A stretch of 64,000 bases of DNA from IMG/VR virus record IMGVR_UViG_3300047445_000186, positions 124,001 through 188,000 of that record; one strand, given 5' to 3'. The notes beneath the pieces were generated by a model. The model was not told the origin of the DNA, did not search any database, and worked only from the letters and a program-made list of their open reading frames with translations. Position numbers and translations under genes: made by a program. Positions 7,535-60,754 of this stretch are shown here, one piece after another (positions within the stretch are counted from its first letter, which is position 1; each line of letters begins with the position of its first letter).

Positions 7535-8110
7535 ATGGATCAAGAACTAAAAGCTGTATTTCTGGACATTGACGGTGTGCTGAACAACTCGCGTTCAGTC
7601 GCCGTCAAAATCGGCCCTTCATCTGAGGGTCTAGCAAAGCGTGTCCGAATCGAACCACTGCCGTTCGTTGTTCAGTACGCGCTGAAGACGATCGATCCGG
7701 TCTGCGTCGCATTGCTGAACAAGCTTTTCGATGCAGATCCTGAGCTCGCATTGGTGCTCAGCTCGTCGCATCGCGCATATCTGATGGAGACCGGGTACTT
7801 ATTCAGGTCGTCTGAGCACTTGGCTGCTCTTCGCCATTATCTGACAGCAATGGGTGTGAACGTTCCGCGGACATTCTCCGCGACTGCACGTTTGCATAAA
7901 GAACGAGGATACGAAGTCGATGACTTCCTTTGCCATGCGTACGAGAACGGAATCGACATCGATCGGTACATCATCCTCGACGATTCGAAGGATTTCCTGC
8001 CAGGGCAGCCACTGATCTGGTGCGACCCTGAGTATGGATTCAGCTACGCGAATTACGTCGAAGCGTGCAAACAACTCGGCCTCCAAGAACCAAGCGTGAT
8101 CCTTTTCTAA
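7535..8110 (+). CDS. HAD-superfamily phosphatase (HAD_SAK_2, RNA-repair-associated type)
   Basis: FLDIDGVLN, LVLSSS, YIILDD motifs. Confidence 0.8.
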   Translation: MDQELKAVFLDIDGVLNNSRSVAVKIGPSSEGLAKRVRIEPLPFVVQYALKTIDPVCVALLNKLFDADPELALVLSSSHRAYLMETGYLFRSSEHLAALRHYLTAMGVNVPRTFSATARLHKERGYEVDDFLCHAYENGIDIDRYIILDDSKDFLPGQPLIWCDPEYGFSYANYVEACKQLGLQEPSVILF

Positions 8111-8111
8111 C

Positions 8112-8630
8112 ATGATCAGAACAAAGCACAACCCAACGATGAACCTCGATAAGAACACTTTCGGAAAAGCCCCAGCGGCAATGTACCTGGTTGTGCTGCT
8201 GCAAGAGCGAGACAATCAAGCCCTGACTCGCAAAGTCGCTCGCGTGATCGAGAGCTTCCGTGAACTGCTGAACGACATCGTGGCGTGTCACTACCAGACC
8301 GAAGAGCTGAAGACCGCGTCGTTCAACAAGCTCCTCGAGATGATGCACGATCGGATCAAGATCGCGACCGCTCAGCTGCCTGATGAATTCATTGGCCACA
8401 TCGTGCGGAACATCCTGACTGGCGAGCTGAAGACGCTGAAGCGGCGCGCAGCCCGTACCGGCCATCTGCAATCGAGCATTGCACGGAAGACGCCAAGCGG
8501 CTGGACCGTGCCGATGGTGAAGGCCACGCCACTGATGAACGAACCGTCTGAAGAAGAACGGATGAAGCAGCTCCAAGCGAAAAGCTCGGCCTATCTCGCT
8601 CGCAAGGGCAAAAAGAACACGTTGTATTGA
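8112..8630 (+). CDS. Hypothetical protein
   Basis: ORF track, operon packing. Confidence 0.6.
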   Translation: MIRTKHNPTMNLDKNTFGKAPAAMYLVVLLQERDNQALTRKVARVIESFRELLNDIVACHYQTEELKTASFNKLLEMMHDRIKIATAQLPDEFIGHIVRNILTGELKTLKRRAARTGHLQSSIARKTPSGWTVPMVKATPLMNEPSEEERMKQLQAKSSAYLARKGKKNTLY

Positions 8631-29300: not shown

Positions 29301-29888
29301 ATGAAAGCACGCCAAACTACCATTGCAGATCGTCCCCAGATTGAAGCGATCGTGAAGTCTAACCCGAAGATGTACGGAGCTGACATCACTCGGTATCACA
29401 GCATCACGATCCATCGATTCGTTGGGCACGTGGTTGGCGATCTGGCGAAGACTGCATGGTGTGTCGAAGACGACGAGGGTCAGATCGTCGGACTGGCGAT
29501 TCAGTTCTGGTGGACCTCAATGCCGGCCTGGTCGATTGCCTCTCTGTTCTTCAAGAATGAACCTGGCAAGAATCAGTTCAACGCGCACAAGATTGGCGCC
29601 GTCCTGGTGAATGCGATGTGCAAAGAAGCCGAATCCCGAAAGATGTACGACTTCTACTACGTAGTAAGAGATAATGAATCTCTTCGTAAGAACATGAGCT
29701 TGAGCGTGAACGACGAATTCACGGAGAGGTACGAGATCAACGATCTGTTCCTGCTGCATCCGTACACTTCGCCGATCTACCCGATGTTCAAGAACATGCT
29801 CGGACACGTAATTGGGCGGAACCGCAAACCAGTGGTTTTCCGCCTTGCATCGCTTAAGAGCAAATATAGGCCGTCTGTATGGGTGTGA
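29301..29888 (+). CDS. GNAT-like fold protein
   Basis: VEDDEGQIVG...KIGAVLVNAMCKEAE; TAAATA-N4-ATG. Confidence 0.5.
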   Translation: MKARQTTIADRPQIEAIVKSNPKMYGADITRYHSITIHRFVGHVVGDLAKTAWCVEDDEGQIVGLAIQFWWTSMPAWSIASLFFKNEPGKNQFNAHKIGAVLVNAMCKEAESRKMYDFYYVVRDNESLRKNMSLSVNDEFTERYEINDLFLLHPYTSPIYPMFKNMLGHVIGRNRKPVVFRLASLKSKYRPSVWV

Positions 29889-31333
29889 ACGTTCTGATCT
29901 TCACTTGCGTCTCTGGACGATTGTTCCAGCGCGCGATTGGAGCGTACCAGGTTGCTGGGTTTCTGCGGCAGCATGGGTACTCAGTGCAGGTCGTTGACTT
30001 CACAGACAACTTCACTGAACAGGAATTGAAGAAGGCCGTCGATCTTTACGTCGACGAGACAACCCTCGCTGTCGGCGTTTCAACCACGTTCTACAGTCAT
30101 CTCGAAAACAAGTTCATCGCCGCGAAGAAGACCTTCGACGCGATCATTCCACAGGAACTTGAGAACGCGATCGTGTACTCGAAGGAGAAATTCCCGAAAG
30201 TAAAGATCGTTTTCGGTGGTTCGCGATCACTGGCAGGCGAGGCAATGCCTTGGGTTGACATGGTCATTCACGGGTACGGTGAAGACAAGTTCCTGACGTA
30301 CTTGGATGGTCTGTCTGGGCGCGCACCAAAGATCTTCTCGATCGGCAAGCCCTTGCGCGTGATCATGGACGATCCGCCGAAGAAGCGATTCGACATCCAA
30401 GAGCTGAGCCATCAGTTCGCGCCACAGGACTTCGTTCTACCTGGTGAAACGCTCCCGATTGAAATCAGCCGTGGCTGTATCTTCAAGTGCAAGTTCTGCG
30501 CGTACCCGCTGAATGGCAAGAAGAAGATGGACTTCCTTCGTTCCGCTCAGTGCGTTCAGGAAGAGCTGTTGCACAACTACGAGAAGTACGGAACCACGTC
30601 GTACTTTATCGGCGACGACACGTTCAACGACAGCACATTCAAGCTAGAGGCATTGCACAAGGTAATCACCGAGCTGCCGTTCAAGCCGAAGTTCACGTGC
30701 TATCTGCGACTCGATCTGCTGTACGCTCATCGCGAACAGATCCAGCTCCTCGATGAGATGGGTCTTGCTTCACCGTTCTTTGGGATCGAATCGCTGAATC
30801 AAAAGTCAGCCACCTCGATCGGCAAGGGCATGAAGACTGGCAAGGTCAAGGATTTCCTACTCGAGCTCTATCACGATCACTGGCGCGGAGAGAAGCCATT
30901 CACGTGCTCGTTCATTGTCGGTCTGCCGCATGAGACCCGTGAAACCGTTCAAGAGACATTTGAGTGGGTGAAGAAGACTGAACTGAGCTCGACGTTCTTT
31001 CCGCTGAGCATCTCAATCAAGTCGTTCTACCAGTCCGAGTTCAATCGGAACTACAAGGATTACGGGTACGATCTGAAGGATCCAGAGACCGGGTACTGGG
31101 AGAGTGAGAATTTCACGCTCGATTCGGCCACTGAGATTGCCGAGCAGTTCAACAAAGAGCTGATGTACACGAACGATCGGCCGAGCTCTTGGTTCCTGAT
31201 GACGATGCTGAATCACGGGATGACCCTTGAAGAGGCACGAAAGGTCTTGGTGAAGGACCTGCCTTGGCCGAAGATTCTGCGGACAAAGCGGGACAAGGTC
31301 GCCGAGTACAAAAAGCTTGTTCTGCAGAGCTAA
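29879..31333 (+). CDS. Cobalamin-binding radical SAM enzyme (class B methyltransferase-like)
   Basis: N-terminal B12-binding-like domain; SRGCIFKCKFC; GIES; IVGLPHET. Confidence 0.88.
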   Translation: MGVNVLIFTCVSGRLFQRAIGAYQVAGFLRQHGYSVQVVDFTDNFTEQELKKAVDLYVDETTLAVGVSTTFYSHLENKFIAAKKTFDAIIPQELENAIVYSKEKFPKVKIVFGGSRSLAGEAMPWVDMVIHGYGEDKFLTYLDGLSGRAPKIFSIGKPLRVIMDDPPKKRFDIQELSHQFAPQDFVLPGETLPIEISRGCIFKCKFCAYPLNGKKKMDFLRSAQCVQEELLHNYEKYGTTSYFIGDDTFNDSTFKLEALHKVITELPFKPKFTCYLRLDLLYAHREQIQLLDEMGLASPFFGIESLNQKSATSIGKGMKTGKVKDFLLELYHDHWRGEKPFTCSFIVGLPHETRETVQETFEWVKKTELSSTFFPLSISIKSFYQSEFNRNYKDYGYDLKDPETGYWESENFTLDSATEIAEQFNKELMYTNDRPSSWFLMTMLNHGMTLEEARKVLVKDLPWPKILRTKRDKVAEYKKLVLQS

Positions 31334-31667: not shown

Positions 31668-32374
31668 TGCTGTCACTGGATGAAGCTCAACGGGCGCTGA
31701 TTCTCAAGAAGCTTGCGCCCCTAGGACGTGTACCTCGGTACGATGCGGAGGCGCAGACCGTCACGCTCTCCGAGACATCAGCACGTCGCTTCATCATTGA
31801 TGGGACCGCGTGCACCCAGCGGCCGCGTTCAATCGCGCTCCAGGACCCAAAGGCGTACGATCCGTCTTATCTCGGATTTGGTATTCACGAAGCCCTCAGT
31901 GTTCTGATCCAAGACGACTACGCACTGTACGCGACTCTGTTCGACACCGTCAGACAGATCGATTCGACAGCAAGCACAATGTTCGGTTCATGCGAGCAGG
32001 CGGCGTTGATTCTGTCGCATAATTCATTCGGTGAAGAGCTGTTCCCGCATGTTCATGCCAGATCGATGATGGACACGCAGACTCTGTCGCTGTTCGTGAA
32101 TTTGACTGGGACTGACTCAGCAACCCTGACGCTATTCGATCCGGTCACTGAAGACTCACGAGTGTTCAAGAACGGATACACCGATCATCGCGTTGTTGCG
32201 GTGCACGCTCGGAAAGCCGATCAGCGTGAAATCAAGATCGAACACGGGTCATTCATCCTGTTCGACGCTGCGAAGACACCACACAAGTTCTCGTACAGCG
32301 ACGACATCTGGCTCACGTTCGTGTACGATCACGTCAATGGAGTCAGAGAAGATGTTCGCGCCAACTCCCTTTAA
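31667..32374 (+). CDS. Cupin/oxygenase-like protein
   Basis: PHVH...LFDAAKTPH. Confidence 0.55.
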   Translation: MLSLDEAQRALILKKLAPLGRVPRYDAEAQTVTLSETSARRFIIDGTACTQRPRSIALQDPKAYDPSYLGFGIHEALSVLIQDDYALYATLFDTVRQIDSTASTMFGSCEQAALILSHNSFGEELFPHVHARSMMDTQTLSLFVNLTGTDSATLTLFDPVTEDSRVFKNGYTDHRVVAVHARKADQREIKIEHGSFILFDAAKTPHKFSYSDDIWLTFVYDHVNGVREDVRANSL

Positions 32375-33107
32375 GATCCTTTTCGTTCAGCTCCTGGCAT
32401 GGATCGGTATTCCGGTCCTGCTTTGGTATGGTTCATGGGTGCACATCATCGGCGCCCTGCTGATGTACACACTGTACGGTGGTGCTGGAGTTTCACTGAC
32501 GTTCCATCGGATCCTGTCGCACGCTGCGTTCAAGTTGAATCCAATTGTGCGGAAGATCATGATCACGCTTGCGAGCTTCGCGAACGTCGGATCACCAATC
32601 ACCTGGGTTGCCGTACATCGAGCGCACCATCGGTTCGTTGACACTGAACGCGATCCGCATTCACCACATCACATGCCGTTCTGGTACATGATGTTCGGCA
32701 CGATGTACTCACAAGTCTCGGTGAAGTTCACTGTCGATCTGCTTCGTGATCCATTCTGTAGGTTCATCCATAAATACTACTTCGCAGTTCAGCTTCCATG
32801 GATCGTTCTGCTGTTCTTGCTTGGCGGGTGGAAAGCCGTTCTTGCGTTCCATCTCGTTCCAGGCGGAATGACATGGCTTGGCGGATCGCTCGTGAACTAC
32901 TTGAATCATCTACATGGGTACAAACCATTCGACGGTCAGGGAACTAGCACGAACAATCTGATCACTGGATTCTTGGTGTTCGGAGAAGGTTGGCACAACA
33001 TGCATCACGCGAAGCCGACCACACCGACTACGAAGCTGAATTGGTGGGAGTTCGATTTGGTTTACCAGATCGGCAGACTGATTGGAACACCAAGGGGCAA
33101 GAGATGA
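32352..33107 (+). CDS. Acyl-lipid/acyl-CoA delta-9-type fatty acid desaturase
   Basis: His boxes HRILSH, HRAHH..DPHSP, GEGWHNMHH; TM helices. Confidence 0.92.
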   Translation: MFAPTPFKILFVQLLAWIGIPVLLWYGSWVHIIGALLMYTLYGGAGVSLTFHRILSHAAFKLNPIVRKIMITLASFANVGSPITWVAVHRAHHRFVDTERDPHSPHHMPFWYMMFGTMYSQVSVKFTVDLLRDPFCRFIHKYYFAVQLPWIVLLFLLGGWKAVLAFHLVPGGMTWLGGSLVNYLNHLHGYKPFDGQGTSTNNLITGFLVFGEGWHNMHHAKPTTPTTKLNWWEFDLVYQIGRLIGTPRGKR

Positions 33108-34221: not shown

Positions 34222-35250
34222 ATGGAACCGAAACTTCTGACACGCGATGCCTTCCGAGAAGGTGTGTTCGCACGGGACAAGCACAAGTGCGTGTTCTGCA
34301 GCGAGCCTGCTCAGGACGCGCATCACATTCTCGAGCGCCGTCTTTGGCCTGATGGCGGGTACTACCTCGAGAACGGCGCGTCTGTTTGCGGTGAGCACCA
34401 CATTCTGTGCGAGCAGACTGTCATTTCGGTCGAGCAAGTTCGCGATGCATGTGGCATTCGCCAACCGCACGTTCCTCCGCATTTCTACCCAGATCACCAG
34501 TACGACAAGTGGGGCAACCCTCTGCTCGATGGTGGCAAGCGCGGTCGTGGTGAACTGTTCTTCGACGAGTCAGTCCAGAAGGTCCTTGGCCAAGGTGGCG
34601 TGCTCGATCTGTTCACGTTGTACGCGAAGTACGGACGGACGTTCCATCTGCCATGGTCTCCTGGCATTCACGACGATGACAAGGCGCTGAAGGACTGCAC
34701 ACAGTTCGAAGGTAAGCGCGTGATCATGTCGCTGAAAGCCGATGGTGAGAACACCACTGGGTACTCGGACGGGCACATTCATGCTCGCTCGATTGACAGC
34801 CGAGGCGGTGAAGATCGCGCTTGGGTGAAGCAATTCCTGTCTGAGAACGTGTGCTACAACTTGCCTGAAGGCTGGCGAATCTGCGGTGAAAATCTGTGGG
34901 CCGAGCACTCGATCAAGTACAGCGACTTGAAATCGTACTTCTACGGCTTCAGCCTGTGGAATGAACGGAACGTCTGCCTCTCGTGGGACGAGACGATCGA
35001 GTATTTCGCTCTGTTAAACGTCACTCCAGTCGACGTGCTCTATGACGGTATCTGGGACGAGGCTGCGATCAGGAAAATCGAGAAGACGCTTGATCTTGAG
35101 AAGGTTGAAGGGTACGTGATCCGACTCGCTGAAGCGTACCCGTACAGCCAATTCAAGAGCTCGATCGCGAAGTTCGTCCGACCCGGGCACGTACAGACAT
35201 CTAAGCATTGGCGGGCAGGTAGCCGCTTCACACCGAACAAACTAGCATGA
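34222..35250 (+). CDS. HNH-like domain fused to ATP-dependent RNA ligase
   Basis: N-term CVFC..DAHH..C..HH; C-term KADGEN (motif I), ICGEN, EGYVIR, AKFVR. Confidence 0.85.
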   Translation: MEPKLLTRDAFREGVFARDKHKCVFCSEPAQDAHHILERRLWPDGGYYLENGASVCGEHHILCEQTVISVEQVRDACGIRQPHVPPHFYPDHQYDKWGNPLLDGGKRGRGELFFDESVQKVLGQGGVLDLFTLYAKYGRTFHLPWSPGIHDDDKALKDCTQFEGKRVIMSLKADGENTTGYSDGHIHARSIDSRGGEDRAWVKQFLSENVCYNLPEGWRICGENLWAEHSIKYSDLKSYFYGFSLWNERNVCLSWDETIEYFALLNVTPVDVLYDGIWDEAAIRKIEKTLDLEKVEGYVIRLAEAYPYSQFKSSIAKFVRPGHVQTSKHWRAGSRFTPNKLA

Positions 35251-37420: not shown

Positions 37421-38257
37421 ATGACTATCAAATCAAAACACATTGCAGTCGGTGCAGCCGTTCTCGCAGTCATTACCTTCGTCGCCTTCGTTTGTACGTG
37501 GCTGATGTTCATGCACACCGAGACGGTCGATCCTGGCTACCATGGCGTGATCATCGACAAGCCATACTTCGGCGGCCATCAAGGTGTTCGAGACGAACCA
37601 CTGAAAGAGGGCCGGATTCTGCTCTTCCGCACCTCCTCGGTCGAGGACGTTCGAATGACGCCACAGTCGCACGTCGTGAAGGTCGATGACTACTCGTCGA
37701 AGGACAACATTCTGCTTGACTTTGAAACCACGATCCAGTTCCGAATCACGGATGCTGTGAAGCTGGTTGACAAGTTCGGTGCAGGTTGGTTCGACAACAA
37801 CATCAAGAATCAGTACCTGGCGATCGTGCGAGAAGCCGTGAAACGGAAGACGATGACGGAGATGATGTCTGATGTGAATGCTGCGCAGCAGATCGATGAC
37901 GAAGTCACGAAGGGTCTGCAAGCACTGGTCACGAACTCCAATCTGCCGATCGAGATCTTGAATGTGTCTATGGGCCGTGCAAAGCCGAACGAGAACGTGC
38001 TCGCTCAGATGAACGAAACCGCTGCGCAACAGCAACGGAAGAAGACACTGATCGAAGCTGAAGCGGCTGAAGTGCAACGTAAAGCCGAGCAGACAGCGAA
38101 GGCTGCAGCTGATAACGCGTACCGCAATGCGATGGGTCTCTCGCCAGAGATGTTCATCCAGCTTGAGAGCATCAAGCGGTACTCCGATGCTTGTGCAAAG
38201 TCTGCGCACTGTATCGTGACCTCCGGCCAGACGAACATTCAAGTACCGGTGAAGTAA
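37421..38257 (+). CDS. SPFH/band-7 (prohibitin-like) membrane protein
   Basis: N-terminal TM, VDPGYHGV, SKDN, coiled-coil C-terminus. Confidence 0.85.
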   Translation: MTIKSKHIAVGAAVLAVITFVAFVCTWLMFMHTETVDPGYHGVIIDKPYFGGHQGVRDEPLKEGRILLFRTSSVEDVRMTPQSHVVKVDDYSSKDNILLDFETTIQFRITDAVKLVDKFGAGWFDNNIKNQYLAIVREAVKRKTMTEMMSDVNAAQQIDDEVTKGLQALVTNSNLPIEILNVSMGRAKPNENVLAQMNETAAQQQRKKTLIEAEAAEVQRKAEQTAKAAADNAYRNAMGLSPEMFIQLESIKRYSDACAKSAHCIVTSGQTNIQVPVK

Positions 38258-40485: not shown

Positions 40486-41222
40486 TGAAGCTCTTTGAAC
40501 TGACTGCCGATCTCGAAGCAGCGCTGAACGACAAAGCGAATGGCGCTGATGAGGTCGAGTACAAGGGTAAGCGGTACCGCCGCTCCGGCCCAAAGAACGC
40601 GACGAGCAAGCCAGGTCGCTGGAAGCTCGTTGAGGCAGTCGTTCAGGCCAGCTTCGGCAAGCGCCGAGGCGTCGAGCAGGACACCGGAATCGAAGTGCCT
40701 AAGGGCTATGACCGCTTTGAAGTCGAACACACCGAGGGTGAGAAATCTGCTTGGGTGATCGGCATCAAGGGGAACACGAAGACGAAGATCTCCCGTGCAG
40801 ATCTGGTTCTCGCTCGTGAGCTCGTGAAGGCGTACAACAAGGGTGGTAAGACGGACAGCGGCTTGAAGCCAATCTCGCTGATGCAGGCGTTCGGCTCGAA
40901 GGAAATGAACGTCTTGCACGACAACGGTATCACGTTCGCTGAGAAGCCATACTGGCACGACTTTGAAGAAGATGGTCGGCGCGCCGACAAGAACATCCAT
41001 CAAATCGCGCTCAAGAAGGTCGAGAAGCTGATTGGCAAGATTCCTGAGTACTCGGCCAAGGAAGTGTACGGCACGGACGTGAAGCAGAACGGTATGCTTG
41101 GTGATGTGAAGAACATGCCAAAGGAAGCCGTCGTGATCATTAAATTCAGCGACGGAACGCGCTATCTTGCTGACACCACGCAAGCTCGCTCGTACATTCG
41201 CATGTGGCAAAAGATCGTGTAA
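40485..41222 (+). CDS. Late protein, candidate head-internal
   Basis: MKLFELTADLEA. Confidence 0.7.
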   Translation: MKLFELTADLEAALNDKANGADEVEYKGKRYRRSGPKNATSKPGRWKLVEAVVQASFGKRRGVEQDTGIEVPKGYDRFEVEHTEGEKSAWVIGIKGNTKTKISRADLVLARELVKAYNKGGKTDSGLKPISLMQAFGSKEMNVLHDNGITFAEKPYWHDFEEDGRRADKNIHQIALKKVEKLIGKIPEYSAKEVYGTDVKQNGMLGDVKNMPKEAVVIIKFSDGTRYLADTTQARSYIRMWQKIV

Positions 41223-42100
41223 TGTTGACCTTCAAAGACTTCATCGCAGCTCAGGCCCTTTACGAGGACATCTTCGTAAAGGGTGATGAGCTTCTGGCTG
41301 CCGTGAATACGAGCAGCACCGTTCGTAAGCCATCAACTCCTACGTCGATCAGCACGAATCTCCGTCCACTTGGCCGTCAGACAGGTCTCACTCGTGGTCT
41401 TGATGTGTGGTACGCTTTCTCGTACAAGCCATCGGACGAATCTGGTGGCTCCACTGATCTGCTGAAGTCTTTCAAGGGTAAGGGCCCGTTCAAGTTCACC
41501 GATGCTCGTCGTGAGAAGTTCATCGATGACACGACAACGCACATGGCATCCGAGTTCAAGAAGATGAACCGCGTTCCAGACGTGATCGTCACGCCTCAGT
41601 CTTCGAGCGTTGTGGTTGCTGAGTTCGCTACCGCTCTCGCAAAGAAGCTTGGCGTTCAATCAGCTAAGATCGGCGCGTTCAAGAAGGCCGACGCTATTCA
41701 GCTCCCTGAAGACAAAGAGAAGGCGCTCACTCTGATCCAGTCGAAGTACATCGACTTGGACTACATCCTCGAGAAATTCAAGGGTGACGACAAGCAGATC
41801 GACGTCGTGATGCGCGAAATCTCGCTTGCTGTCTATCGCTCGATCAAGAAGCACGGTCACATCGTCGCGAAAGAGCTGCCGAAGATGTTCAGCAAGTTCG
41901 TGAAGAACATTGTTGACAATGCGCTCGAAGGCGATGATCAGTACATCCTGTGGGACAAAGACGTGATGGTCGTCGATGACGTGCTCTCGTCTGGTGCCAC
42001 AATGAGCGATCTGTTCCGCGCTTGCAAGGACCTGCTTGCAGCAAAGGTCTGGGGCTGTACCCTGTTCGCACGCACATCAGCCGCTAAAGAAGCAGAATGA
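41222..42100 (+). CDS. Type I phosphoribosyltransferase-fold protein
   Basis: PRPP-binding loop VMVVDDVLSSGATM; N-terminus MLTFKDFI. Confidence 0.8.
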   Translation: MLTFKDFIAAQALYEDIFVKGDELLAAVNTSSTVRKPSTPTSISTNLRPLGRQTGLTRGLDVWYAFSYKPSDESGGSTDLLKSFKGKGPFKFTDARREKFIDDTTTHMASEFKKMNRVPDVIVTPQSSSVVVAEFATALAKKLGVQSAKIGAFKKADAIQLPEDKEKALTLIQSKYIDLDYILEKFKGDDKQIDVVMREISLAVYRSIKKHGHIVAKELPKMFSKFVKNIVDNALEGDDQYILWDKDVMVVDDVLSSGATMSDLFRACKDLLAAKVWGCTLFARTSAAKEAE

Positions 42101-43579: not shown

Positions 43580-43796
43580 CGATCGTGACGATCGAGACCC
43601 TCGGTTTAAGAGACACCGAGCTACCAAAACTCCGGACCGCGATAACTCTGGCGAGTAGTCTTCAGCCAGACGAGTGCGAAAAAGGCAAATTGGTTTTATG
43701 CCTCTCGATTCGAGAGGCGTTATTTCAAAACGTGCAGATAGGATTCCGAGGAAAGCTGAAGGCCAGGATTCGGAGGAAGCAGTACGTTTTGAAATA
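43580..43796 (+). ncRNA. Multi-hairpin structured RNA preceding first tRNA
   Basis: CTCGGT/ACCGAG, CTGGC/GCCAG, GCCTCTCG/CGAGAGGC and TATTTCAAAACGTGC/GTACGTTTTGAAATA stems. Confidence 0.45.
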
Positions 43797-43798
43797 AC

Positions 43799-43874
43799 GG
43801 GTCGTTGACAGAGCGGCAGATGTACCTCCCTCTTAAGGAGATCTAGCAGGGTTCGACTCCCTGGCGACCCACCA
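43799..43874 (+). tRNA. tRNA-Lys(CTT)
   Basis: Cloverleaf, loop CTCTTAA, CCA end. Confidence 0.85.
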
Positions 43875-43879
43875 AACAT

Positions 43880-43990
43880 GCCGAGATAGCACGATGGTCG
43901 TGCACTTTATGTAAGAGCGAGTGTCTACGGGAAACACGGCACTTGACAGAAAAGAAACGGATGGTGGTTCAAATCCATCTCTTGGCGCCA
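43880..43990 (+). ncRNA. tRNA-like RNA with extended anticodon arm and no anticodon loop
   Basis: Acceptor GCCGAGA/TCTTGGC-GCCA, D arm, TTCAAAT T-loop; ~50-nt irregular hairpin in place of anticodon arm. Confidence 0.7.
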
Positions 43991-43996
43991 AACAAT

Positions 43997-44072
43997 GGGA
44001 CTTTCGTATAGCTGGTGCGTACGGGAGCTTGAAAACCTTCAGGAAGCGGTTCGATTCCGCTAGGTCCCACCA
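43997..44072 (+). tRNA. tRNA-Phe(GAA)
   Basis: Loop TTGAAAA, CCA. Confidence 0.85.
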
Positions 44073-44076
44073 ATTT

Positions 44077-44151
44077 GCTTCGTTCGACTACCGGTTAGGT
44101 CGCTAGCCTTTCAAGCTGGAGAAACGGGTTCGACTCCCGTACGAAGCACCA
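44077..44151 (+). tRNA. tRNA-Glu(TTC)
   Basis: Loop CTTTCAA, CCA. Confidence 0.9.
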
Positions 44152-44158
44152 GAACAAT

Positions 44159-44237
44159 AGGGTTGAAATCGAAGTGGCACGAGATACATGGCTTTGACCC
44201 ATGGTAATATCAGGTTCGAGTCCTGACAGCCCTGCCA
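44159..44237 (+). tRNA. tRNA-Gln(TTG)
   Basis: CATGG-CTTTGAC-CCATG, CCA. Confidence 0.88.
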
Positions 44238-44242
44238 AACAT

Positions 44243-44320
44243 ATCAGCGTCGTCTAAATGGTCTAGGACATCAGACTTTCAATCTGAGCAATGCGGGTTC
44301 AACTCCCGTCGCTGATGCCA
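44243..44320 (+). tRNA. tRNA-Glu(TTC)
   Basis: TCAGA-CTTTCAA-TCTGA, CCA. Confidence 0.9.
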
Positions 44321-44326
44321 AACAAT

Positions 44327-44401
44327 ACCTTAGTAGCTCAGTGGTAGAGCACCGTCTTGATAAGGCGTAGGTCGTTGGTTCGATTCCAACTTAAGGTACC
44401 A
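44327..44401 (+). tRNA. tRNA-Ile(GAT)
   Basis: Loop TTGATAA, CCA. Confidence 0.88.
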
Positions 44402-44408
44402 GAATAAT

Positions 44409-44482
44409 GGGACGTTCGTATATGGGTATTATGTGGCGCTGTCTACGCTACGAAACGGGTTCGAGTCCCGTACGTCCCGCCA
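44409..44482 (+). tRNA. tRNA-Asp(GTC)
   Basis: TGGCG-CTGTCTA-CGCTA, CCA. Confidence 0.88.
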
Positions 44483-44486
44483 AATT

Positions 44487-44561
44487 CGTGCGGTAGCATT
44501 ATGGTAATGCGCCACCCTCATAAGGTGTCCCAAGTGGGTTCGATTCCCACCTGCACGACCA
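44487..44561 (+). tRNA. tRNA-Met(CAT), elongator-type or Ile2
   Basis: Loop CTCATAA; C1-G72 paired so not initiator-like; CCA. Confidence 0.8.
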
Positions 44562-44573
44562 AGTGTCCTTTGC

Positions 44574-44645
44574 TCCGGTGTAGCTCAGCGGTAGAGCAGC
44601 TCGCTGTTAACGAGTTGGTCGTTGGTTCGATCCCAGCCTCCGGAG
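44574..44645 (+). tRNA. tRNA-Asn(GTT), no encoded CCA
   Basis: Loop CTGTTAA; ends G-CAA. Confidence 0.85.
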
Positions 44646-44661
44646 CAAAGAACATTTCTAT

Positions 44662-44756
44662 TCCCCTGTACTCTAATTGGTAAGAGACCTGGCTGTTAAC
44701 CAGACGTAAAGGCCGTAAGGCGTAATATGCAAGTTCGAAGCTTGCTGGGGGAGCCA
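44662..44756 (+). tRNA. tRNA-Asn(GTT) with long variable arm
   Basis: Loop CTGTTAA; ~25-nt variable region with GCC-GTAA-GGC hairpin; CCA. Confidence 0.78.
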
Positions 44757-44806
44757 AGATTAAGAAACCTTACTCACGCGGTCACTCGCGGTCCCGTAGG
44801 GTTTAT

Positions 44807-44882
44807 GCGCGGTTAGCTCAGTTGGTAGAGCAAACGACCGATAATCGTTAGGTCGCTGGTTCGAATCCAGCACTGCGCACCA
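44807..44882 (+). tRNA. tRNA-Ile(GAT), C at position 33
   Basis: AACGA-CCGATAA-TCGTT, CCA. Confidence 0.88.
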
Positions 44883-44890
44883 CAAATTAT

Positions 44891-44967
44891 GCCTCTTTAG
44901 CTCAACTGGATAGAGCACTGGCCTACGAAGCCGGGGGTTGCAGGTTCGAATCCTGTGAGAGGCACCA
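44891..44967 (+). tRNA. tRNA-Arg(ACG)
   Basis: Loop CTACGAA, CCA. Confidence 0.92.
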
Positions 44968-44973
44968 GAATAT

Positions 44974-45034
44974 TCCGACCGTCAGTGCAAGGTTATCCTT
45001 CTACGATTCCCCCTTGCGCGATCTCTTTGTCGGA
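44974..45034 (+). ncRNA. Y-RNA-like ncRNA inside tRNA array
   Basis: TCCGAC/GTCGGA stem, CCG-N9-GGTTATC, GTGCAAGG/CCTTGCGC stem, 3' ATCTCTTTGT shared with 54929-54985. Confidence 0.7.
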
Positions 45035-45042
45035 CGAAACAT

Positions 45043-45116
45043 AGGTCCTTGGTGTAATGGCAGCATGACGGTCTCCAAAACCGTTCGTGGGGGTTCGAGT
45101 CCCTCAGGACCTGCCA
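45043..45116 (+). tRNA. tRNA-Trp(CCA)
   Basis: ACGGT-CTCCAAA-ACCGT, CCA. Confidence 0.92.
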
Positions 45117-45185
45117 AGATAACGGTGCGTTTAGGAACGGACGCTTAATTGCCAACCCCACATAATCTGGCGGCCGAATAACAAT

Positions 45186-45260
45186 GTGCACTTGACAGAA
45201 TGGTAATGTCGCTGGCTGCAACCCAGTTGTTCGGGGGTTCGATTCCCTCAGTGCACTCCA
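45186..45260 (+). tRNA. tRNA-Cys(GCA)
   Basis: Loop CTGCAAC, U73, CCA. Confidence 0.88.
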
Positions 45261-45416
45261 ATTACGACAGGAGCAAGGCGCCCTCGGGCTTGTGGCTAGC
45301 TGTGGAAAGTGACCCTCCACCTCCAACGTCGTTCCAATCAAAGCTTCGTCGTTCCATTCACACGGGTACGCGACTCCGTTTCTCGCAAGAGGTGCAGGGC
45401 GAAGCAACGCAATTAT

Positions 45417-45489
45417 AGGTGAGCCAGCGGCGCTGGACAAGAGCATCCAAAGCTCGAAGTTGGTAGTTCGACTCTGCCATCGCCTGCCA
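45417..45489 (+). tRNA. Atypical tRNA-Trp(CCA), minimal D arm
   Basis: D arm CCAGC-GGC-GCTGG; loop ATCCAAA; TTCGACT; CCA. Confidence 0.7.
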
Positions 45490-45494
45490 ATTAT

Positions 45495-45566
45495 AGGTGA
45501 TCCATGGGCCGTGGACATGAGCCTCCAAAACTCGTTGGGACAGTTCGACTCTGTCATTGCCTGCCA
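45495..45566 (+). tRNA. Atypical tRNA-Trp(CCA), minimal D arm
   Basis: D arm CCATG-GGC-CGTGG; loop CTCCAAA; CCA. Confidence 0.7.
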
Positions 45567-45574
45567 AAATTTAT

Positions 45575-45650
45575 GGTGTACGTAGTGTAGTGGTCTGCAC
45601 CCTAGGCTGTGAACCTGGTAGTGGGAGTTCGATCCTCCTCGTACACCCCA
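45575..45650 (+). tRNA. tRNA-His(GTG)
   Basis: G-1/C73, loop CTGTGAA, CCA. Confidence 0.9.
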
Positions 45651-45658
45651 GAATATGT

Positions 45659-45731
45659 TGCCTCGTGATATGGAAATCGCCCCTGGCTCTGACCCAGGTG
45701 GATGACGGTTCGATTCCGTCCGGGGTTGCCA
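45659..45731 (+). tRNA. tRNA-Gln(CTG), short D arm
   Basis: CCTGG-CTCTGAC-CCAGG, CCA. Confidence 0.8.
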
Positions 45732-45736
45732 AATAC

Positions 45737-45812
45737 GCCTTGTGAGTGAATGTGGAGAGCACAGCGGTTTCGTATTCCGCAGGACGCAGTTCGACTCTGC
45801 GACAAGGCACCA
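45737..45812 (+). tRNA. tRNA-Thr(CGT)
   Basis: GCGGT-TTCGTAT-TCCGC; GCC acceptor start, A73, CCA. Confidence 0.78.
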
Positions 45813-45819
45813 GAATTAT

Positions 45820-45892
45820 TGGGGTATGACATGGACGTTGGCCTGGGCTTTGACCCCGGTGCCGGTCGGTTCGATTCCGACTACCCTTGCCA
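45820..45892 (+). tRNA. tRNA-Gln(TTG), short D arm
   Basis: CTGGG-CTTTGAC-CCCGG, CCA. Confidence 0.78.
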
Positions 45893-45895
45893 AAC

Positions 45896-45973
45896 ACCGC
45901 ATTAGCTCAACTGGATCAGAGCGTCGCACTCCGAAGGCGACAGATGTGGGTTCGAATCCCATGTGTGGTACCA
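45896..45973 (+). tRNA. tRNA-Arg(CCG)
   Basis: Loop CTCCGAA, CCA. Confidence 0.85.
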
Positions 45974-45980
45974 AAATTAC

Positions 45981-46056
45981 GCCGTCATAGCTCAGTTGGT
46001 AGAGCAGTTCCTTGGTATGGAGAAGGTCAGGGGTTCGATTCCTCTTGACGGCACCA
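45981..46056 (+). tRNA. tRNA-Thr(GGT)
   Basis: Loop TTGGTAT, CCA. Confidence 0.9.
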
Positions 46057-46248
46057 GTTTAGCACATGCTCGGCATGATAACACAGGGTCATTGATCCGG
46101 ACATGTTCGATCTGCGGTCTGACGTAGGAGTACGGCAAAGACAAGCTCGGAACGGGAACTCCCATGTGCTGATTCATTACTTGAAAGGAGCGCGTAATGC
46201 GTACGTCAGTTTCGACGCCTAGCGCGTCTGGTAAACGCCATACACTTT

Positions 46249-46324
46249 GGGTGTATGGCGTAAAGGTTAGCGCATCGGGCTTTTAACCCGTAAGGTCAGA
46301 GTTCGACTCTCTGTGCACCCACCA
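46249..46324 (+). tRNA. tRNA-Lys(TTT)
   Basis: CGGG-CTTTTAA-CCCG, CCA. Confidence 0.9.
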
Positions 46325-54858: not shown

Positions 54859-54921
54859 ACTGCACCCGGCGTCATAGAATTCATTTCTCGACGCTAAATA
54901 CAAACGCTGCAGAAATGCAGC

Positions 54922-54998
54922 GCTGCTTTCGAACCGAAGATAATGGGTTATCGGCTAAGTTTCCCACTATCATCTCTTTGTTCGAGCATTTTAGCAGC
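54922..54998 (+). ncRNA. Y-RNA-like ncRNA 1 upstream of Ro60
   Basis: TCGAAC-C-GAA / TTTGTTCGA bulged-C helix; GATAATGGG/CCCACTATC; CCG-N9-GGTTATC. Confidence 0.78.
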
Positions 54999-55024
54999 CT
55001 CTTCAACACTTACTTCAATCTCAT

Positions 55025-55172
55025 TCAGCCGCAGCAAGTTGGTTATCAACTACTACGACCTGGACCGTCCGCCCTGTAGAAACACTAAACTCTCTACTGG
55101 GTAACCCGTTGACTCCTCTGGTTATTGGAGCGCCTCGCCGAGAGGGCAGACTTTTGTCTGAAGATCGGCTGA
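55025..55172 (+). ncRNA. Y-RNA-like ncRNA 2 with large multi-helix domain
   Basis: TCAGCCG/CGGCTGA closing stem; CCG-N9-GGTTATC; internal hairpins. Confidence 0.6.
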
Positions 55173-55358: not shown

Positions 55359-56978
55359 ATGAACATGTACACCGACCACGCCGCTTCTCTGAACGCCGTT
55401 CAGACTTCCACCCCACAGACGGAAGCAATTCCTGGCCGCGAAGCCGAGATGAAGCTGAACAACGCTGGTGGATTCACGTTCACTCTTGATCAGTGGGGCG
55501 TCCTCGATCGCTTCATCATGATCGGTTCCGAGAACGGGAACTACTACGTCGGTCAAAAGGACGTGATGAAGCAATCGTTCGCGAACACCCTGAAGTGTAT
55601 CGCTGAAGACGGTCTGCGTGCTGTCGCTCGTGCTCTCGAGTACTCAACCTCTGGTCGCGCTCCGAAGAACGACCCTGCTCTGGTTGTGCTCGCGCTCGCC
55701 GCATCGAAGGGAACGCCTGAAGTTCAATCCGCTGCTTACGACGCCCTGCCAAAGGTCGCTCGTACCGGTACCCATCTGTTCACGTTCGTCTCGATTCTGA
55801 ACTCCCTCGGGAAGTGGAACGCCGCTGCAAAGCGCGGCCTGGCGAAGTGGTACACGAACCGTTCGATCGACAAGCTCGCGATCCAAGTGCTGAAGTACCA
55901 GCAGCGCAATGGCTGGTCGCACCGCGACGTCCTGCGTCTGGCACACGTGAAGCCGCAGAACGACATCCAGACGAATCTGTTCAAGTACATCACGAAGGGT
56001 GGCGACGCTCTCGTGCAAGGCTCGCCGATTCCGCAGCTCGTGATCGACTTCGAATTCCTGAAGCGCGCCGAGTCGGCCAAGGATGTCGTTCGTCTGATCG
56101 AGTCGAATCCATCGATCGCATGGGAACTCGTTCCTACGCAATTCCTGAAGGATCCGGACGTGCTGATGGCGCTCCTCCCTTCGATGGGCATGACCGCTGT
56201 GATCCGTCAACTGGGTAAGCTCACTGCCGCTGGCGTGATCAAGCCGATGTCGGAAGGCGAGAAGTTGGTCGTCGCGAAGCTCTCGGATGCCGAAGCAATC
56301 AAGCGTGGCCGTGTCCATCCGATCACTATCCTCCAAGCCCTGAAGCAGTACCAAGCTGGTCATGGTGAAAAGGGTTCGTTGGTCTGGTCTCCAGTTCAAC
56401 GCGTCGTGTCGGCCCTGGATGACTCGTTCTACTCTGCGTTCACGCTTGGCGAGGACAAGAAGGAGAATCACTTCATCGCTTGCGACATCTCCGGCTCCAT
56501 GACCATGGACAGCGCGAAGGTGATCGGTTCGCCGAACCTCTTGGCTGGTGAAGTGGCTGCGGTGTTCGCGATGGCGATCGCTCGTACCCAATCGAACTAT
56601 TTCCTCGCTGGTTTCAAGCAGAACTTGGAACCACTGAAGATCTCGCCGACGATGCGTCTCGCTGACGCGTTGAACGCAATGCGTGCTATGCACTGGCAAG
56701 GCGGCTCGACCGACTGTGCTAAGGCATTCGAGTACGCGCTCCAGAACGGTATCGCGGTGGACAAGTTCACCGTGATTACCGACAATGAAACGTACGCGGG
56801 TGGCCAAGCCCCAGTGCAGGCGCTCAAGAAGTATCGTGACCGTACTGGTCGCGCTGCGAAGTCGATCGTGATTGCTACCTCGGTATCTGAATTCACGATC
56901 GCCGATCCGAAGGACGGTGGTATGTTGGACATCGCAGGGTTTGACTCGGCTGCTCCACAGATCATCGCTGATTTCTAA
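55359..56978 (+). CDS. rsr: Ro60/TROVE-domain RNA-binding protein with C-terminal vWA
   Basis: NNAGGF..LDRF..GSE.G.YY; KYQQRNGWSHRDVLRLAH; DISGSM; ITDNET; GFD. Confidence 0.95.
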   Translation: MNMYTDHAASLNAVQTSTPQTEAIPGREAEMKLNNAGGFTFTLDQWGVLDRFIMIGSENGNYYVGQKDVMKQSFANTLKCIAEDGLRAVARALEYSTSGRAPKNDPALVVLALAASKGTPEVQSAAYDALPKVARTGTHLFTFVSILNSLGKWNAAAKRGLAKWYTNRSIDKLAIQVLKYQQRNGWSHRDVLRLAHVKPQNDIQTNLFKYITKGGDALVQGSPIPQLVIDFEFLKRAESAKDVVRLIESNPSIAWELVPTQFLKDPDVLMALLPSMGMTAVIRQLGKLTAAGVIKPMSEGEKLVVAKLSDAEAIKRGRVHPITILQALKQYQAGHGEKGSLVWSPVQRVVSALDDSFYSAFTLGEDKKENHFIACDISGSMTMDSAKVIGSPNLLAGEVAAVFAMAIARTQSNYFLAGFKQNLEPLKISPTMRLADALNAMRAMHWQGGSTDCAKAFEYALQNGIAVDKFTVITDNETYAGGQAPVQALKKYRDRTGRAAKSIVIATSVSEFTIADPKDGGMLDIAGFDSAAPQIIADF

Positions 56979-60332: not shown

Positions 60333-60754
60333 ATCCGTTCAAGCGCACTGGTTTCGATTCGATCATTGGCAAGGGCATGGTCGTTCTTGGCGATCTTCTC
60401 CTGCAAGAAGGCACAACCACTGTGATTGACGGCACGCTAGCCGGTCAAGACATCCGCGTTCATAACACGACCCCTGACAAGGTTGATGTGAAGACCACTC
60501 TCGTCGTTGGCGGATCGGTTTCAATCGCGCGTGGTGATCTGAATTCCGGTGGCACGATCCGAGTGCCGAACGTGACGGTCGCTGGTGTCCTCGAATGCGA
60601 AACGCTGATCTGCGAAGGCCGCCTCGCTCTGAAGGCTGGTGCGAAGATCGTTGCGAAACAGATCCAGTACCGTGACATCGTGATCGAGAACGGCGCAATC
60701 GTTCTGAGTCAAATGATGCACCTTGATCACATCTCTGCCGGGGAGCAGACCTAA
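60329..60754 (+). CDS. Bactofilin (polymer-forming cytoskeletal protein)
   Basis: SIIGKGMVVLGDL..IDG..V.G..A.I....I.IENGA beta-helix pattern. Confidence 0.75.
   Translation: MNPFKRTGFDSIIGKGMVVLGDLLLQEGTTTVIDGTLAGQDIRVHNTTPDKVDVKTTLVVGGSVSIARGDLNSGGTIRVPNVTVAGVLECETLICEGRLALKAGAKIVAKQIQYRDIVIENGAIVLSQMMHLDHISAGEQT

What the first reader, a model, noticed from the sequence alone, without database searches (positions are those of the whole stretch)
43880..43990. tRNA-shaped RNA with anticodon arm replaced by a long irregular hairpin
Seen: intact acceptor stem with GCCA, D arm and T arm. The anticodon arm is ~50 nt (CTTT...AAAG base, CGAGTGTC/GGCACTTG helix, 12-nt apical loop) with no 7-nt anticodon loop. 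It is too short for a group I intron and has no tmRNA tag ORF. Inference: a tRNA mimic, such as a decoy for anticodon nucleases or tRNA-sensing defences, or a tRNA with an unusual intron needing the phage ligase.
Basis: partly seen in the sequence, partly recalled or inferred. Interest (0 to 1): 0.65.

Follow-up and report, generated by a model that had tools for sequence, protein, structure and literature searches.

The report
Phage tRNA gene interrupted by insert
In the tRNA gene array of an uncultured 332-kb soil phage, one otherwise ordinary tRNA gene (valine type) carries 33 extra bases in its anticodon loop; it is found only in this phage lineage and is most likely a disabled tRNA copy, not a purpose-built tRNA mimic, although removal of the extra bases from the RNA has not been tested.

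Summary
Window 43880-43990 (+) is a tRNA-derived gene with an acceptor stem plus GCCA, a D arm and a T arm (Rfam tRNA 35.2 bits, cut-off 29), and about 50 nt where the 17-nt anticodon arm should be. It breaks down into a standard 75-nt class I tRNA frame, a 33-nt insert (43910-43942) at the 5' edge of the anticodon loop, and a TGG tandem duplication in the T stem. Removing the 33 nt is the only clean excision that restores a 5-7-5 arm; the loop is then UUGACAG (Val, GAC).

The arm hairpin is no more stable than shuffled sequence (z = -1.1). No homologue with the arm exists in 48 related phage records; only identical copies were found. Relatives sharing the cluster have ordinary tRNAs in that slot. 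The genome already has a standard tRNA-Val(GAC). There is no splicing endonuclease or RtcB, though three RNA ligases are present. The phage's Ro60 has its own conserved Y-like RNA next to it.

Best reading: a lineage-specific, insertion-interrupted tRNA gene, probably non-decoding, of the kind called "enigmatic tRNA introns" in huge phages. No RNA data exist, so splicing or a decoy role cannot be excluded.

The parts
43880..43886 (+). Acceptor stem, 5' strand (GCCGAGA)
   Evidence: Pairs with 43980-86 over 7 bp including one G-U. Aligned to the acceptor positions of Rfam tRNA.
43889..43903 (+). D arm (GCAC / GATGGTC / GTGC). It can also form 6 bp with a 3-nt loop. Positions 14 and 21 are G and C, not the usual A and A.
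   Evidence: Rfam alignment and fold.
43905..43909 (+). Anticodon stem, 5' strand (CTTTA)
   Evidence: Pairs with 43950-54 (AAAAG): four pairs plus an A-A mismatch.
43910..43942 (+). 33-nt insert (equivalently 43911-43943, because T is repeated at the junction). It contains most of the 8-bp helix 43918-25/43938-45 and the 12-nt apical loop 43926-37.
   Evidence: ARAGORN -i gives the intron position. It is the only clean excision restoring a standard arm. It is unique in the genome. It matches no Rfam family at E <= 10.
43943..43949 (+). Anticodon-loop heptamer TTGACAG (U33, GAC at 43945-47, A37). It is base-paired in the unspliced fold.
43950..43954 (+). Anticodon stem, 3' strand (AAAAG)
43955..43959 (+). 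Variable loop AAACG. It is 5 nt if the T stem is read as GATGG, or 8 nt (to 43962) if the T stem is read as GGTGG.
   Evidence: Enumeration of both registers.
43960..43979 (+). T arm containing a tandem TGG-TGG (43962-64 and 43965-67), T loop TTCAAAT (43968-74) and 3' strand CCATC (43975-79)
   Evidence: Read directly from the sequence. Deleting one TGG gives a 75-nt standard frame that default ARAGORN calls tRNA-Val(GAC).
43980..43990 (+). Acceptor stem 3' strand (TCTTGGC), discriminator G and encoded CCA
   Evidence: Nearly all tRNAs of the cluster encode CCA.
43799..46324 (+). The tRNA gene array that contains the candidate. The candidate lies 5 nt after tRNA-Lys(CTT) and 6 nt before tRNA-Phe(GAA).
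   Evidence: ARAGORN and Rfam. The simple scan finds no credible promoter or terminator at the candidate; its only + strand terminator-like hit inside the array (43889-43903) is the candidate's own D arm.

Best explanation
It is a tRNA gene of the valine (GAC) type, sitting in the phage's tandem tRNA array, that has picked up two length changes. One is a 33-nt insertion at the 5' edge of the anticodon loop. The other is a 3-nt TGG duplication in the T stem.

Shown: the body is a real tRNA. The 111 nt break down exactly into a 75-nt standard frame plus these two additions. The element occurs only in this one phage lineage.

Inferred: it lies within 5-6 nt of flanking tRNAs and keeps an intact acceptor/T-arm unit with CCA. 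It is therefore most likely co-transcribed with the array and trimmed by RNase P and the 3' processing enzymes into a ~111-nt tRNA-shaped RNA. In that RNA the former anticodon is paired inside an accidental hairpin, so it cannot decode. In other words, it is a disabled, redundant tRNA copy in a fast-turnover tRNA array, not an RNA selected for a new function.
For: - Rfam tRNA scores 35.2 bits with a single 47-nt insertion in the anticodon arm.
- There is one unique clean excision (33 nt), giving loop UUGACAG. Removing one TGG as well gives a 75-nt class I frame. Default ARAGORN calls both versions tRNA-Val(GAC).
- The arm fold is not better than shuffles: z = -1.12. The insert is single-copy.
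- No homologue with the arm was found in 10 + 34 + 4 related phage records, including RsoM2USA, XacN1, Xoo-sp13, Phosso and Atu_ph07. The metagenome scan on the conserved upstream anchor returned only two already known relatives.
- Relatives that share the upstream anchor and the array have other, ordinary-length tRNA genes in the slot: G011 Arg(ACG), G012 a Glu-like gene, and G001 an uninterrupted 76-nt tRNA-like gene.
- The restored tRNA would be poor: the anticodon stem has 1 G-C and 3 A-U pairs plus an A-A mismatch, and positions 14/21 are G/C.
- It would also be redundant. A standard Val(GAC) lies at genome 117019 and Val(TAC) at 121497.
- The array holds several other degenerate or expanded tRNA-like genes, which fits birth-and-death turnover.
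- No EndA and no RtcB are encoded.
Against: - No RNA data exist, so removal of the insert is untested.
- The body still scores above Rfam's cut-off and keeps a perfect T loop and CCA. That could mean a very recent insertion, or ongoing selection.
- All copies seen are identical, so neither decay nor constraint can be measured.
- Interrupted tRNA genes recur in related phages. G003 has a 37-nt insert at position 37/38 in a 57.6-bit tRNA, and G002 has an insert of about 80 nt. 'Enigmatic' conserved tRNA introns were reported in Lak megaphages. That hints at a real but unknown biology.
- A hidden standard anticodon arm appears in only 4.8% of whole-region shuffles.
Confidence: 0.5

Rival explanations
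1. The 33 nt are a genuine short intron of a kind not yet characterised in bacteria or phages. The precursor would be cut at both ends of the insert by an unknown endonuclease or RNA activity and rejoined by one of the phage RNA ligases, giving a second tRNA-Val(GAC).
For: - ARAGORN -i calls it this way, and the excision that restores a standard loop is unique (4.8% by chance).
- The phage encodes two Rnl2-family ligases and one T4 Rnl1-type ligase.
- Related phages carry other tRNAs with inserts in the anticodon loop, one of them a very well preserved tRNA (57.6 bits).
- Lak megaphages have conserved 'enigmatic' tRNA introns (10.1101/356790).
Against: - It is far too short for group I or group II introns, and Rfam finds no ribozyme or intron match at E <= 10.
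- It is not a bulge-helix-bulge: the proposed cut sites lie at a helix base and inside the 8-bp helix.
- There is no EndA and no RtcB.
- With the stem held fixed, a standard loop arises by chance in 27% of shuffles.
- The product would have a weak anticodon stem and duplicate an existing tRNA.
- The insert is not conserved in any relative.
Confidence: 0.2
2. The unspliced 111-nt RNA is itself functional. It would be a tRNA-shaped RNA whose acceptor/T/D body engages tRNA-binding proteins while the altered arm stops it entering translation. Possible targets include host tRNA-targeting toxins or sensors, CCA-adding or modification enzymes, and RNase P. This would make it a decoy or sponge.
For: - It has an intact acceptor stem, T loop and encoded CCA in a body above the Rfam cut-off.
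- The phage invests heavily in tRNA and RNA-repair functions: about 46 tRNAs, a tmRNA, three RNA ligases and Ro60.
- Phage tRNAs that counter tRNA-targeting defences are established (own knowledge, for example the T5 tRNA that neutralises PARIS), though none of that kind turned up with a long arm.
Against: - There is no conservation in relatives that share the array and the RNA-repair genes.
- The arm is not more structured than random sequence.
- The anticodon triplet is paired, so it cannot bait nucleases that cut anticodon loops.
- A TGG duplication in the T stem looks like decay, not design.
Confidence: 0.15
3. It is the tRNA-like Y RNA (YrlA-type) partner of the phage's Ro60 protein, with the long arm acting as the Ro-binding stem.
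For: - A Ro60 gene lies 11 kb downstream in the window (55359-56978).
- YrlA RNAs combine a tRNA-like domain with a long stem (PMC4201824).
- The 3' strand of the arm contains CUUGAC, which resembles the 3' strand of metazoan Y RNA stems (resemblance recalled from memory plus the Rfam consensus).
Against: - The arm lacks GNCGAAN0-1G and GGUCCGA on its 5' strand, which is the strand Ro reads.
- It matches no Y RNA or YrlA family at E <= 10.
- Its topology is the reverse of YrlA: the ends are in the acceptor stem.
- A separate Y-like stem-bulge hairpin sits directly upstream of rsr and is conserved in G011.
- G011 has Ro but no candidate.
Confidence: 0.03

Closest known systems
Oversized tRNA genes with 'enigmatic introns' in Lak megaphages and other huge phages (Devoto et al., preprint 10.1101/356790)
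   Same: Both are tRNA genes in a very large phage genome that bacterial tRNA finders miss. Both become callable once an insert in the anticodon region is allowed. In both, the insert matches no known intron class and the removal mechanism is unknown. In both, copies are identical across samples.
   Different: Lak introns were reported as conserved across cohorts and across several genomes, and in one case insert-free variants defined the excision point. Here only one lineage carries the insert, no insert-free variant was found, and the tRNA also has a T-stem duplication and a weak anticodon stem.
Archaeal/eukaryal tRNA introns (bulge-helix-bulge, cut by EndA, joined by RtcB or Trl1)
   Same: A short insert (tens of nt) in the anticodon arm of a tRNA precursor. 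The predicted arm has bulges on opposite strands around a short helix.
   Different: The geometry is 2(+1)-3-5, not 3-4-3. The excision that restores the loop does not cut in the bulges. The insert lies at 31/32 or 32/33, not 37/38. There is no EndA or RtcB in the genome.
Group I introns in bacterial tRNA genes (tRNA-Leu UAA, tRNA-fMet, tRNA-Ile, tRNA-Arg; PMC3984707)
   Same: An insert in the anticodon loop of a bacterial-type tRNA gene.
   Different: 33 nt cannot hold a group I core, since the smallest natural ones are about 200 nt (own knowledge). Rfam gives no RF00028 match.
Bacterial Y RNAs of the YrlA type (tRNA mimics bound by Ro60/Rsr; PMC4201824)
   Same: A tRNA-like T/D/acceptor module joined to a long stem where the anticodon arm would be. 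A Ro60 gene is present in the same genome.
   Different: The topology is opposite (free ends and CCA on the acceptor stem). There is no Ro-binding motif and no Rfam match. It is not adjacent to rsr, which has its own conserved Y-like hairpin.
tRNA pseudogenes and degenerate tRNA-like genes in phage tRNA arrays
   Same: It sits in a tandem array with rapid gain and loss between relatives. It is redundant with a standard isoacceptor. It carries indels and non-standard core positions.
   Different: The body still scores above the Rfam cut-off, and the acceptor/T unit and CCA are intact, so it should still be processed into a stable RNA.

Membership tests
tRNA (Rfam RF00005) | Score at or above the curated gathering score | tested here: met
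   35.2 bits against 29, with full model coverage 1-71.
tRNA (Rfam RF00005) | 7-bp acceptor stem, discriminator and CCA; T arm with a GTTCRANYC-type loop; D arm | tested here: met
   The D loop has G14/C21 where A14/A21 is usual.
tRNA (Rfam RF00005) | 5-bp anticodon stem closing a 7-nt loop with U33 and a purine at position 37 | tested here: not met
   Not met in the gene as encoded: a 47-nt insertion sits in the model's anticodon arm. It is met only after 33 nt are removed, and then with an A-A mismatch.
Group I intron in a tRNA | Catalytic core P3-P9 (about 200 nt or more) that matches RF00028 | tested here: not met
   The insert is 33 nt, and no Rfam match was found at E <= 10 in 43780-44260.
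BHB (archaeal-type) tRNA intron | Two 3-nt bulges separated by a 4-bp helix, with cleavage in the bulges | tested here: not met
   The fold gives a 3-bp helix between a 2-nt (+1) bulge and a 5-nt bulge. The loop-restoring cut sites are not in bulges.
BHB (archaeal-type) tRNA intron | EndA-family splicing endonuclease available | tested here: not met
   PF01974 is absent from the 94%-complete phage genome, and the controls ring only in archaea. The host genome is unknown.
tmRNA | tRNA-like domain plus a tag reading frame | tested here: not met
   ARAGORN's tmRNA search finds only the permuted tmRNA at genome 109754-110086, and nothing here.
YrlA / Y RNA (Ro60 partner) | Ro-binding motif GNCGAAN0-1G or GGUCCGA on the 5' strand of the long stem | tested here: not met
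   A regex test finds neither motif in the candidate. The motif definitions come from PMC4201824.
YrlA / Y RNA (Ro60 partner) | Encoded next to rsr and co-occurring with it | tested here: not met
   It lies 11.4 kb from rsr. G011 has rsr and a conserved Y-like hairpin but no candidate.
Huge-phage 'enigmatic tRNA intron' genes (Devoto et al.) | Oversized tRNA gene in a >200-kb phage that becomes callable when an insert in the anticodon region is allowed, with the insert matching no known class | tested here: met
.
Huge-phage 'enigmatic tRNA intron' genes (Devoto et al.) | Insert conserved across distinct genomes, and removed from the RNA | tested here: inconclusive
   Only identical copies of one lineage were found. 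Removal could not be tested because no RNA run holds the locus.

The most novel reading that the evidence does not exclude
Short (30-90 nt), non-group-I, non-BHB inserts in the anticodon loops of tRNA genes are a recurrent, functional feature of this soil jumbo-phage clade: 33 nt here, 37 nt in G003 and about 80 nt in G002. On this reading they are removed by a phage-specific cut-and-ligate pathway that uses the phage RNA ligases, or they switch the tRNA between a masked form and a decoding form. That would be a new kind of tRNA intron in the bacterial world.
Probability: 0.15. Interest if true: 0.8.

Novelty: new member of a known kind. Interest (0 to 1): 0.3.

Why it matters
If it is a dead tRNA copy, it matters mostly for annotation. 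Standard tRNA finders skip such genes, and intron-tolerant settings over-interpret them. It also illustrates how quickly tRNA arrays in jumbo phages gain, lose and damage genes.

If the insert is in fact removed, or the 111-nt RNA is used as such, it would give a concrete and compact test case. The open question, raised by the Lak megaphage work, is what the 'enigmatic' inserts in huge-phage tRNA genes are. The phage's three RNA ligases would be the natural candidates for the joining step.

Tried and rejected
- **Homologue searches that found nothing beyond identical copies:**
  - blastn against 50,697 phage records;
  - an exact-pattern scan of IMG/VR with D arm, long gap and T loop;
  - a neighbour-protein search;
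  - covariance model R1 over 48 related records;
  - a metagenome scan on the conserved upstream anchor, which returned only two known relatives.
- **G001 slot-mate as uninterrupted orthologue:** rejected as proof. It is no more similar to the candidate than any other tRNA (about 70% identity, rank 12 of 168).
- **Insert as a repeated mobile hairpin:** rejected, because it is single-copy.
- **Recombination footprint:** a 13-nt identity between the arm and the 5' end of tRNA-Cys (window 45188-45200), and an internal 8-mer repeat, are both at chance level (and own estimate).
- **Reads:** no RNA run holds the locus. Contigs from four DNA runs show the same sequence and no insert-free form.
- **Bulge-helix-bulge, k-turn and GNRA readings of the arm:** checked by eye against the fold and not met.
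- **Type II tRNA reading (long variable arm):** rejected, because the first 17 nt after the D arm do not pair.
- **G003-type interrupted tRNA:** the second copy found (L122) is identical, so it gives no covariation.
- **Literature:** no paper was found that characterises how short phage tRNA inserts are removed.

Full report
**Where it is.** The window is bases 124001-188000 of a 331,776-bp IMG/VR virus record estimated 94% complete. The large terminase places it among jumbo phages of soil and plant-associated proteobacteria. The closest named relative is Ralstonia phage RsoM2USA (46% identity), followed by Xanthomonas phages Xoo-sp13 and XacN1, Pseudomonas PA5oct-like phages, Agrobacterium Atu_ph07 and Sinorhizobium Phosso. 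The closest uncultured relatives are G001 (311 kb, 73% TerL identity), G002 (292 kb, 68%) and G003 (93 kb, 54%). G011 (336 kb) and G012 (10.8 kb) share a conserved element upstream of the tRNA array. Public runs holding the locus are all rhizosphere DNA metagenomes. The genome carries about 46 tRNA genes in two arrays and a permuted tmRNA.

**The observation.** The candidate (43880-43990, + strand) lies inside the second array (43799-46324). It starts 5 nt after tRNA-Lys(CTT) and ends 6 nt before tRNA-Phe(GAA). Default ARAGORN and the filtered Rfam scan skip it. A permissive scan scores it as tRNA at 35.2 bits (cut-off 29) over the full model, with one 47-nt insertion in the anticodon arm. A whole-genome run reproduces this with E about 1e-6. 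The insert is also seen in an independent IMG/VR contig and in a public-run contig, so it is not an assembly artefact.

**What the arm is.** With introns allowed, ARAGORN calls tRNA-Val(GAC) with a 33-nt intron at 43910-43942. I enumerated every clean deletion of 20-44 nt. This is the only one that restores a 5-bp stem and a 7-nt loop with U33 and a purine at position 37. It gives stem CTTTA/AAAAG and loop UUGACAG. The T-arm region reads GA-TGG-TGG-TTCAAAT, which is a tandem TGG. With one copy removed, the variable loop is 5 nt, the T stem is a perfect GATGG/CCATC, and the whole gene is 75 nt. Default ARAGORN then calls it tRNA-Val(GAC). The 111 nt are therefore a standard class I frame plus 33 nt plus 3 nt.

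The statistical weight is moderate. A hidden standard arm appears in 4.8% of whole-region shuffles, and in 27% if the stem is kept fixed. The hairpin itself is not special (z = -1.12; 29 of 200 shuffles fold at least as well), and the whole RNA is only mildly favoured (z = -1.93). In the unspliced fold the GAC triplet is paired, not displayed.

**Comparison with relatives.** A covariance model of the element found no counterpart in 48 related records. All of its hits are ordinary tRNAs of 74-97 nt. Rfam's tRNA model run over G000, G001, G002, G011 and G012 recovered the candidate as a positive control. It found no orthologous oversized gene.

Four lineages share a conserved element upstream of the array, and in three of them (the window's phage, G011 and G012) tRNA-Lys(CTT) is the first gene; in G001 ARAGORN calls the first gene tRNA-Gln(CTG). 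What follows differs in each:
- G011 has tRNA-Arg(ACG).
- G012 has a Glu-like tRNA.
- G001 has an uninterrupted 76-nt tRNA-like gene with the same GCCGAG start and loop TTGAAAA (Rfam 36 bits).

The G001 gene is not specifically similar to the candidate (rank 12 of 168), so it cannot be claimed as the uninterrupted orthologue. The insert has no other copy in the genome. Every copy of the candidate I could find is identical, so covariation cannot be assessed. The honest statement is that the arm is not conserved in anything sequenced so far.

**Mechanistic context.** The genome has no EndA-type splicing endonuclease and no RtcB. It does have two Rnl2-family ligases, one in the window at 34222-35250, and one T4 Rnl1-type ligase. 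The arm does not form a bulge-helix-bulge, and the loop-restoring cut sites lie at a helix base and inside the 8-bp helix. No ribozyme or intron family matches. The restored tRNA would have a weak anticodon stem with an A-A mismatch. It would duplicate the standard tRNA-Val(GAC) at genome 117019, to which it is not closely related.

The arrays contain several other degenerate or expanded tRNA-like genes:
- sub-threshold Gln(UUG)-like genes at 44160-44235 and 45820-45892;
- two tandem Trp-like genes at about 45420-45566;
- a 95-nt 'Asn' gene with an extra arm.

Together these point to a fast-turnover array in which one damaged copy is unsurprising.

**The Ro60 lead.** The window encodes a Ro60/Rsr orthologue at 55359-56978, with TROVE at 95 bits and the Ro60 vWA domain at 161 bits. 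Bacterial Y RNAs of the YrlA type join a tRNA-like domain to a long Ro-binding stem (PMC4201824), so I tested whether the candidate could be that partner. It fails on four counts:
- The arm lacks GNCGAAN0-1G and GGUCCGA.
- No Y RNA family matches it.
- Its topology is the reverse of YrlA.
- A separate stem-bulge hairpin lies directly upstream of rsr at 54921-54999. It matches the nematode stem-bulge RNA family at 30.4 bits, E = 0.003, and carries GAACCGAAG.

Both strands of that hairpin's Ro-type helix are invariant in G011 upstream of its own Ro gene. G011 has Ro but no candidate.

**Precedent.** Devoto et al. [quoted passage not shown] They contain 'enigmatic introns', were found by switching the tRNA finder to eukaryotic settings, match no Rfam class, and are identical across cohorts. 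The authors suggested such genes may be common in large phages. I found no later paper that explains them.

Related phages here also have interrupted tRNAs:
- G003 has a 37-nt insert at position 37/38 in a 57.6-bit tRNA, and a second tRNA split by about 408 nt.
- G002 has an insert of about 80 nt.

Each is in a different tRNA and lineage.

**Verdict.** The feature is real and is a tRNA gene interrupted in the anticodon loop. My probabilities are:
- 0.5: a lineage-specific, non-decoding relic that is still transcribed and end-processed;
- 0.2: a short intron of unknown mechanism;
- 0.15: a functional tRNA-shaped RNA;
- 0.03: a Ro partner.

The remainder is unassigned. It belongs with the already described but unexplained class of oversized huge-phage tRNA genes, so I rate it a new member of a known kind, of modest interest. 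RNA-level data would settle the question.

Noticed in passing
window 55359-56978 (+) and 54921-54999 (+): The phage encodes a Ro60/Rsr orthologue (TROVE plus Ro60 vWA domains). Directly upstream is a ~79-nt stem-bulge hairpin resembling Y RNAs. Rfam matches it to nematode sbRNA RF01656 at 30.4 bits, E = 0.003, below the gathering score. It carries the motifs GAACCGAAG and UGGGUUAUC. Both helix strands are invariant in relative G011 upstream of its own Ro gene. A second conserved GGTTATC block follows at about 55030-55050. This is a likely phage Y RNA without a tRNA-like domain.
   Followed up: partly
window 43590-43800 (+): A conserved structured element lies upstream of the tRNA array and is shared by four phage lineages. 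It has a ~56-nt core (43634-43689). In its hairpin CTGNC...GNCAG, the variable pair appears as G-C, U-A and A-U in different lineages. Before the core is a covarying hairpin; after it come a terminator-like hairpin and a long inverted repeat abutting the first tRNA. It has no Rfam match at E <= 1.
   Followed up: partly
genome 120643-120752 (outside the window, 3.3 kb upstream of its start); orthologue G011 60382-60498 (-): A 107-117-nt tRNA-like gene (Rfam 32.6 and 36.9 bits) is conserved between two phages. Both copies share the same acceptor stem (GCGCGTG) and carry an extra T-arm-like hairpin (GTTCGA-type loop) inside a variable region of about 41 nt. The anticodon-arm sequences differ completely between the two copies. 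Unlike the candidate, this odd tRNA-like RNA is conserved.
   Followed up: partly
window 44160-44235, 45820-45892, about 45420-45566, and 44662-44756 (+): Further atypical tRNA-like genes in the array. There are two Gln(UUG)-like genes just under the Rfam cut-off (28.7 and 26.8 bits). There are two tandem Trp(CCA)-like genes that default tools miss. There is also a 95-nt 'tRNA-Asn(GTT)' with an extra hairpin of about 20 nt in the variable region, which is unusual for Asn.
   Followed up: partly
L099 complement 8341-8454 and 7795-8296 (G003); L098 347-507 (G002): Related jumbo phages carry other interrupted tRNA genes. One is a very good tRNA (57.6 bits) with a 37-nt insert at position 37/38. 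One is a tRNA split by about 408 nt that itself contains a tRNA-like gene, with no group I match at the gathering score. One is a 161-nt tRNA with an insert of about 80 nt made of two hairpins.
   Followed up: partly
window 34222-35250 (+); genome 86008-87321 and 253641-255008: There are three RNA ligase genes: two of the Rnl2 family (PF09414) and one T4 Rnl1-like (PF09511). There is no RtcB. This is an RNA-repair toolkit typical of jumbo phages.
   Followed up: partly
genome 109754-110086 (outside the window): ARAGORN calls a permuted tmRNA with tag peptide ANSDSFRLVA.
   Followed up: no
genome 41628-42176 and 42403-42975 (outside the window): The terminase N-terminal domain (PF03237) matches twice in adjacent open frames of 248 and 510 aa. 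This could mean a duplicated or split large terminase. Several relatives also show the TerL match in two pieces.
   Followed up: no
window 61369-63327, 29879-31333, 32193-33107, 37421-38257, 41204-42100: Auxiliary genes near the array include a PrkA-type AAA serine kinase, a B12-binding radical SAM enzyme, a fatty-acid desaturase, an SPFH/Band 7 protein and a phosphoribosyltransferase-like protein.
   Followed up: no
window 43939-43951 versus 45188-45200: A 13-nt exact identity (GCACTTGACAGAA) links the 3' side of the candidate's arm to the 5' end of tRNA-Cys in the same array. It is at chance level (E about 0.2-0.4), but it could be a trace of recombination between array members.
   Followed up: partly
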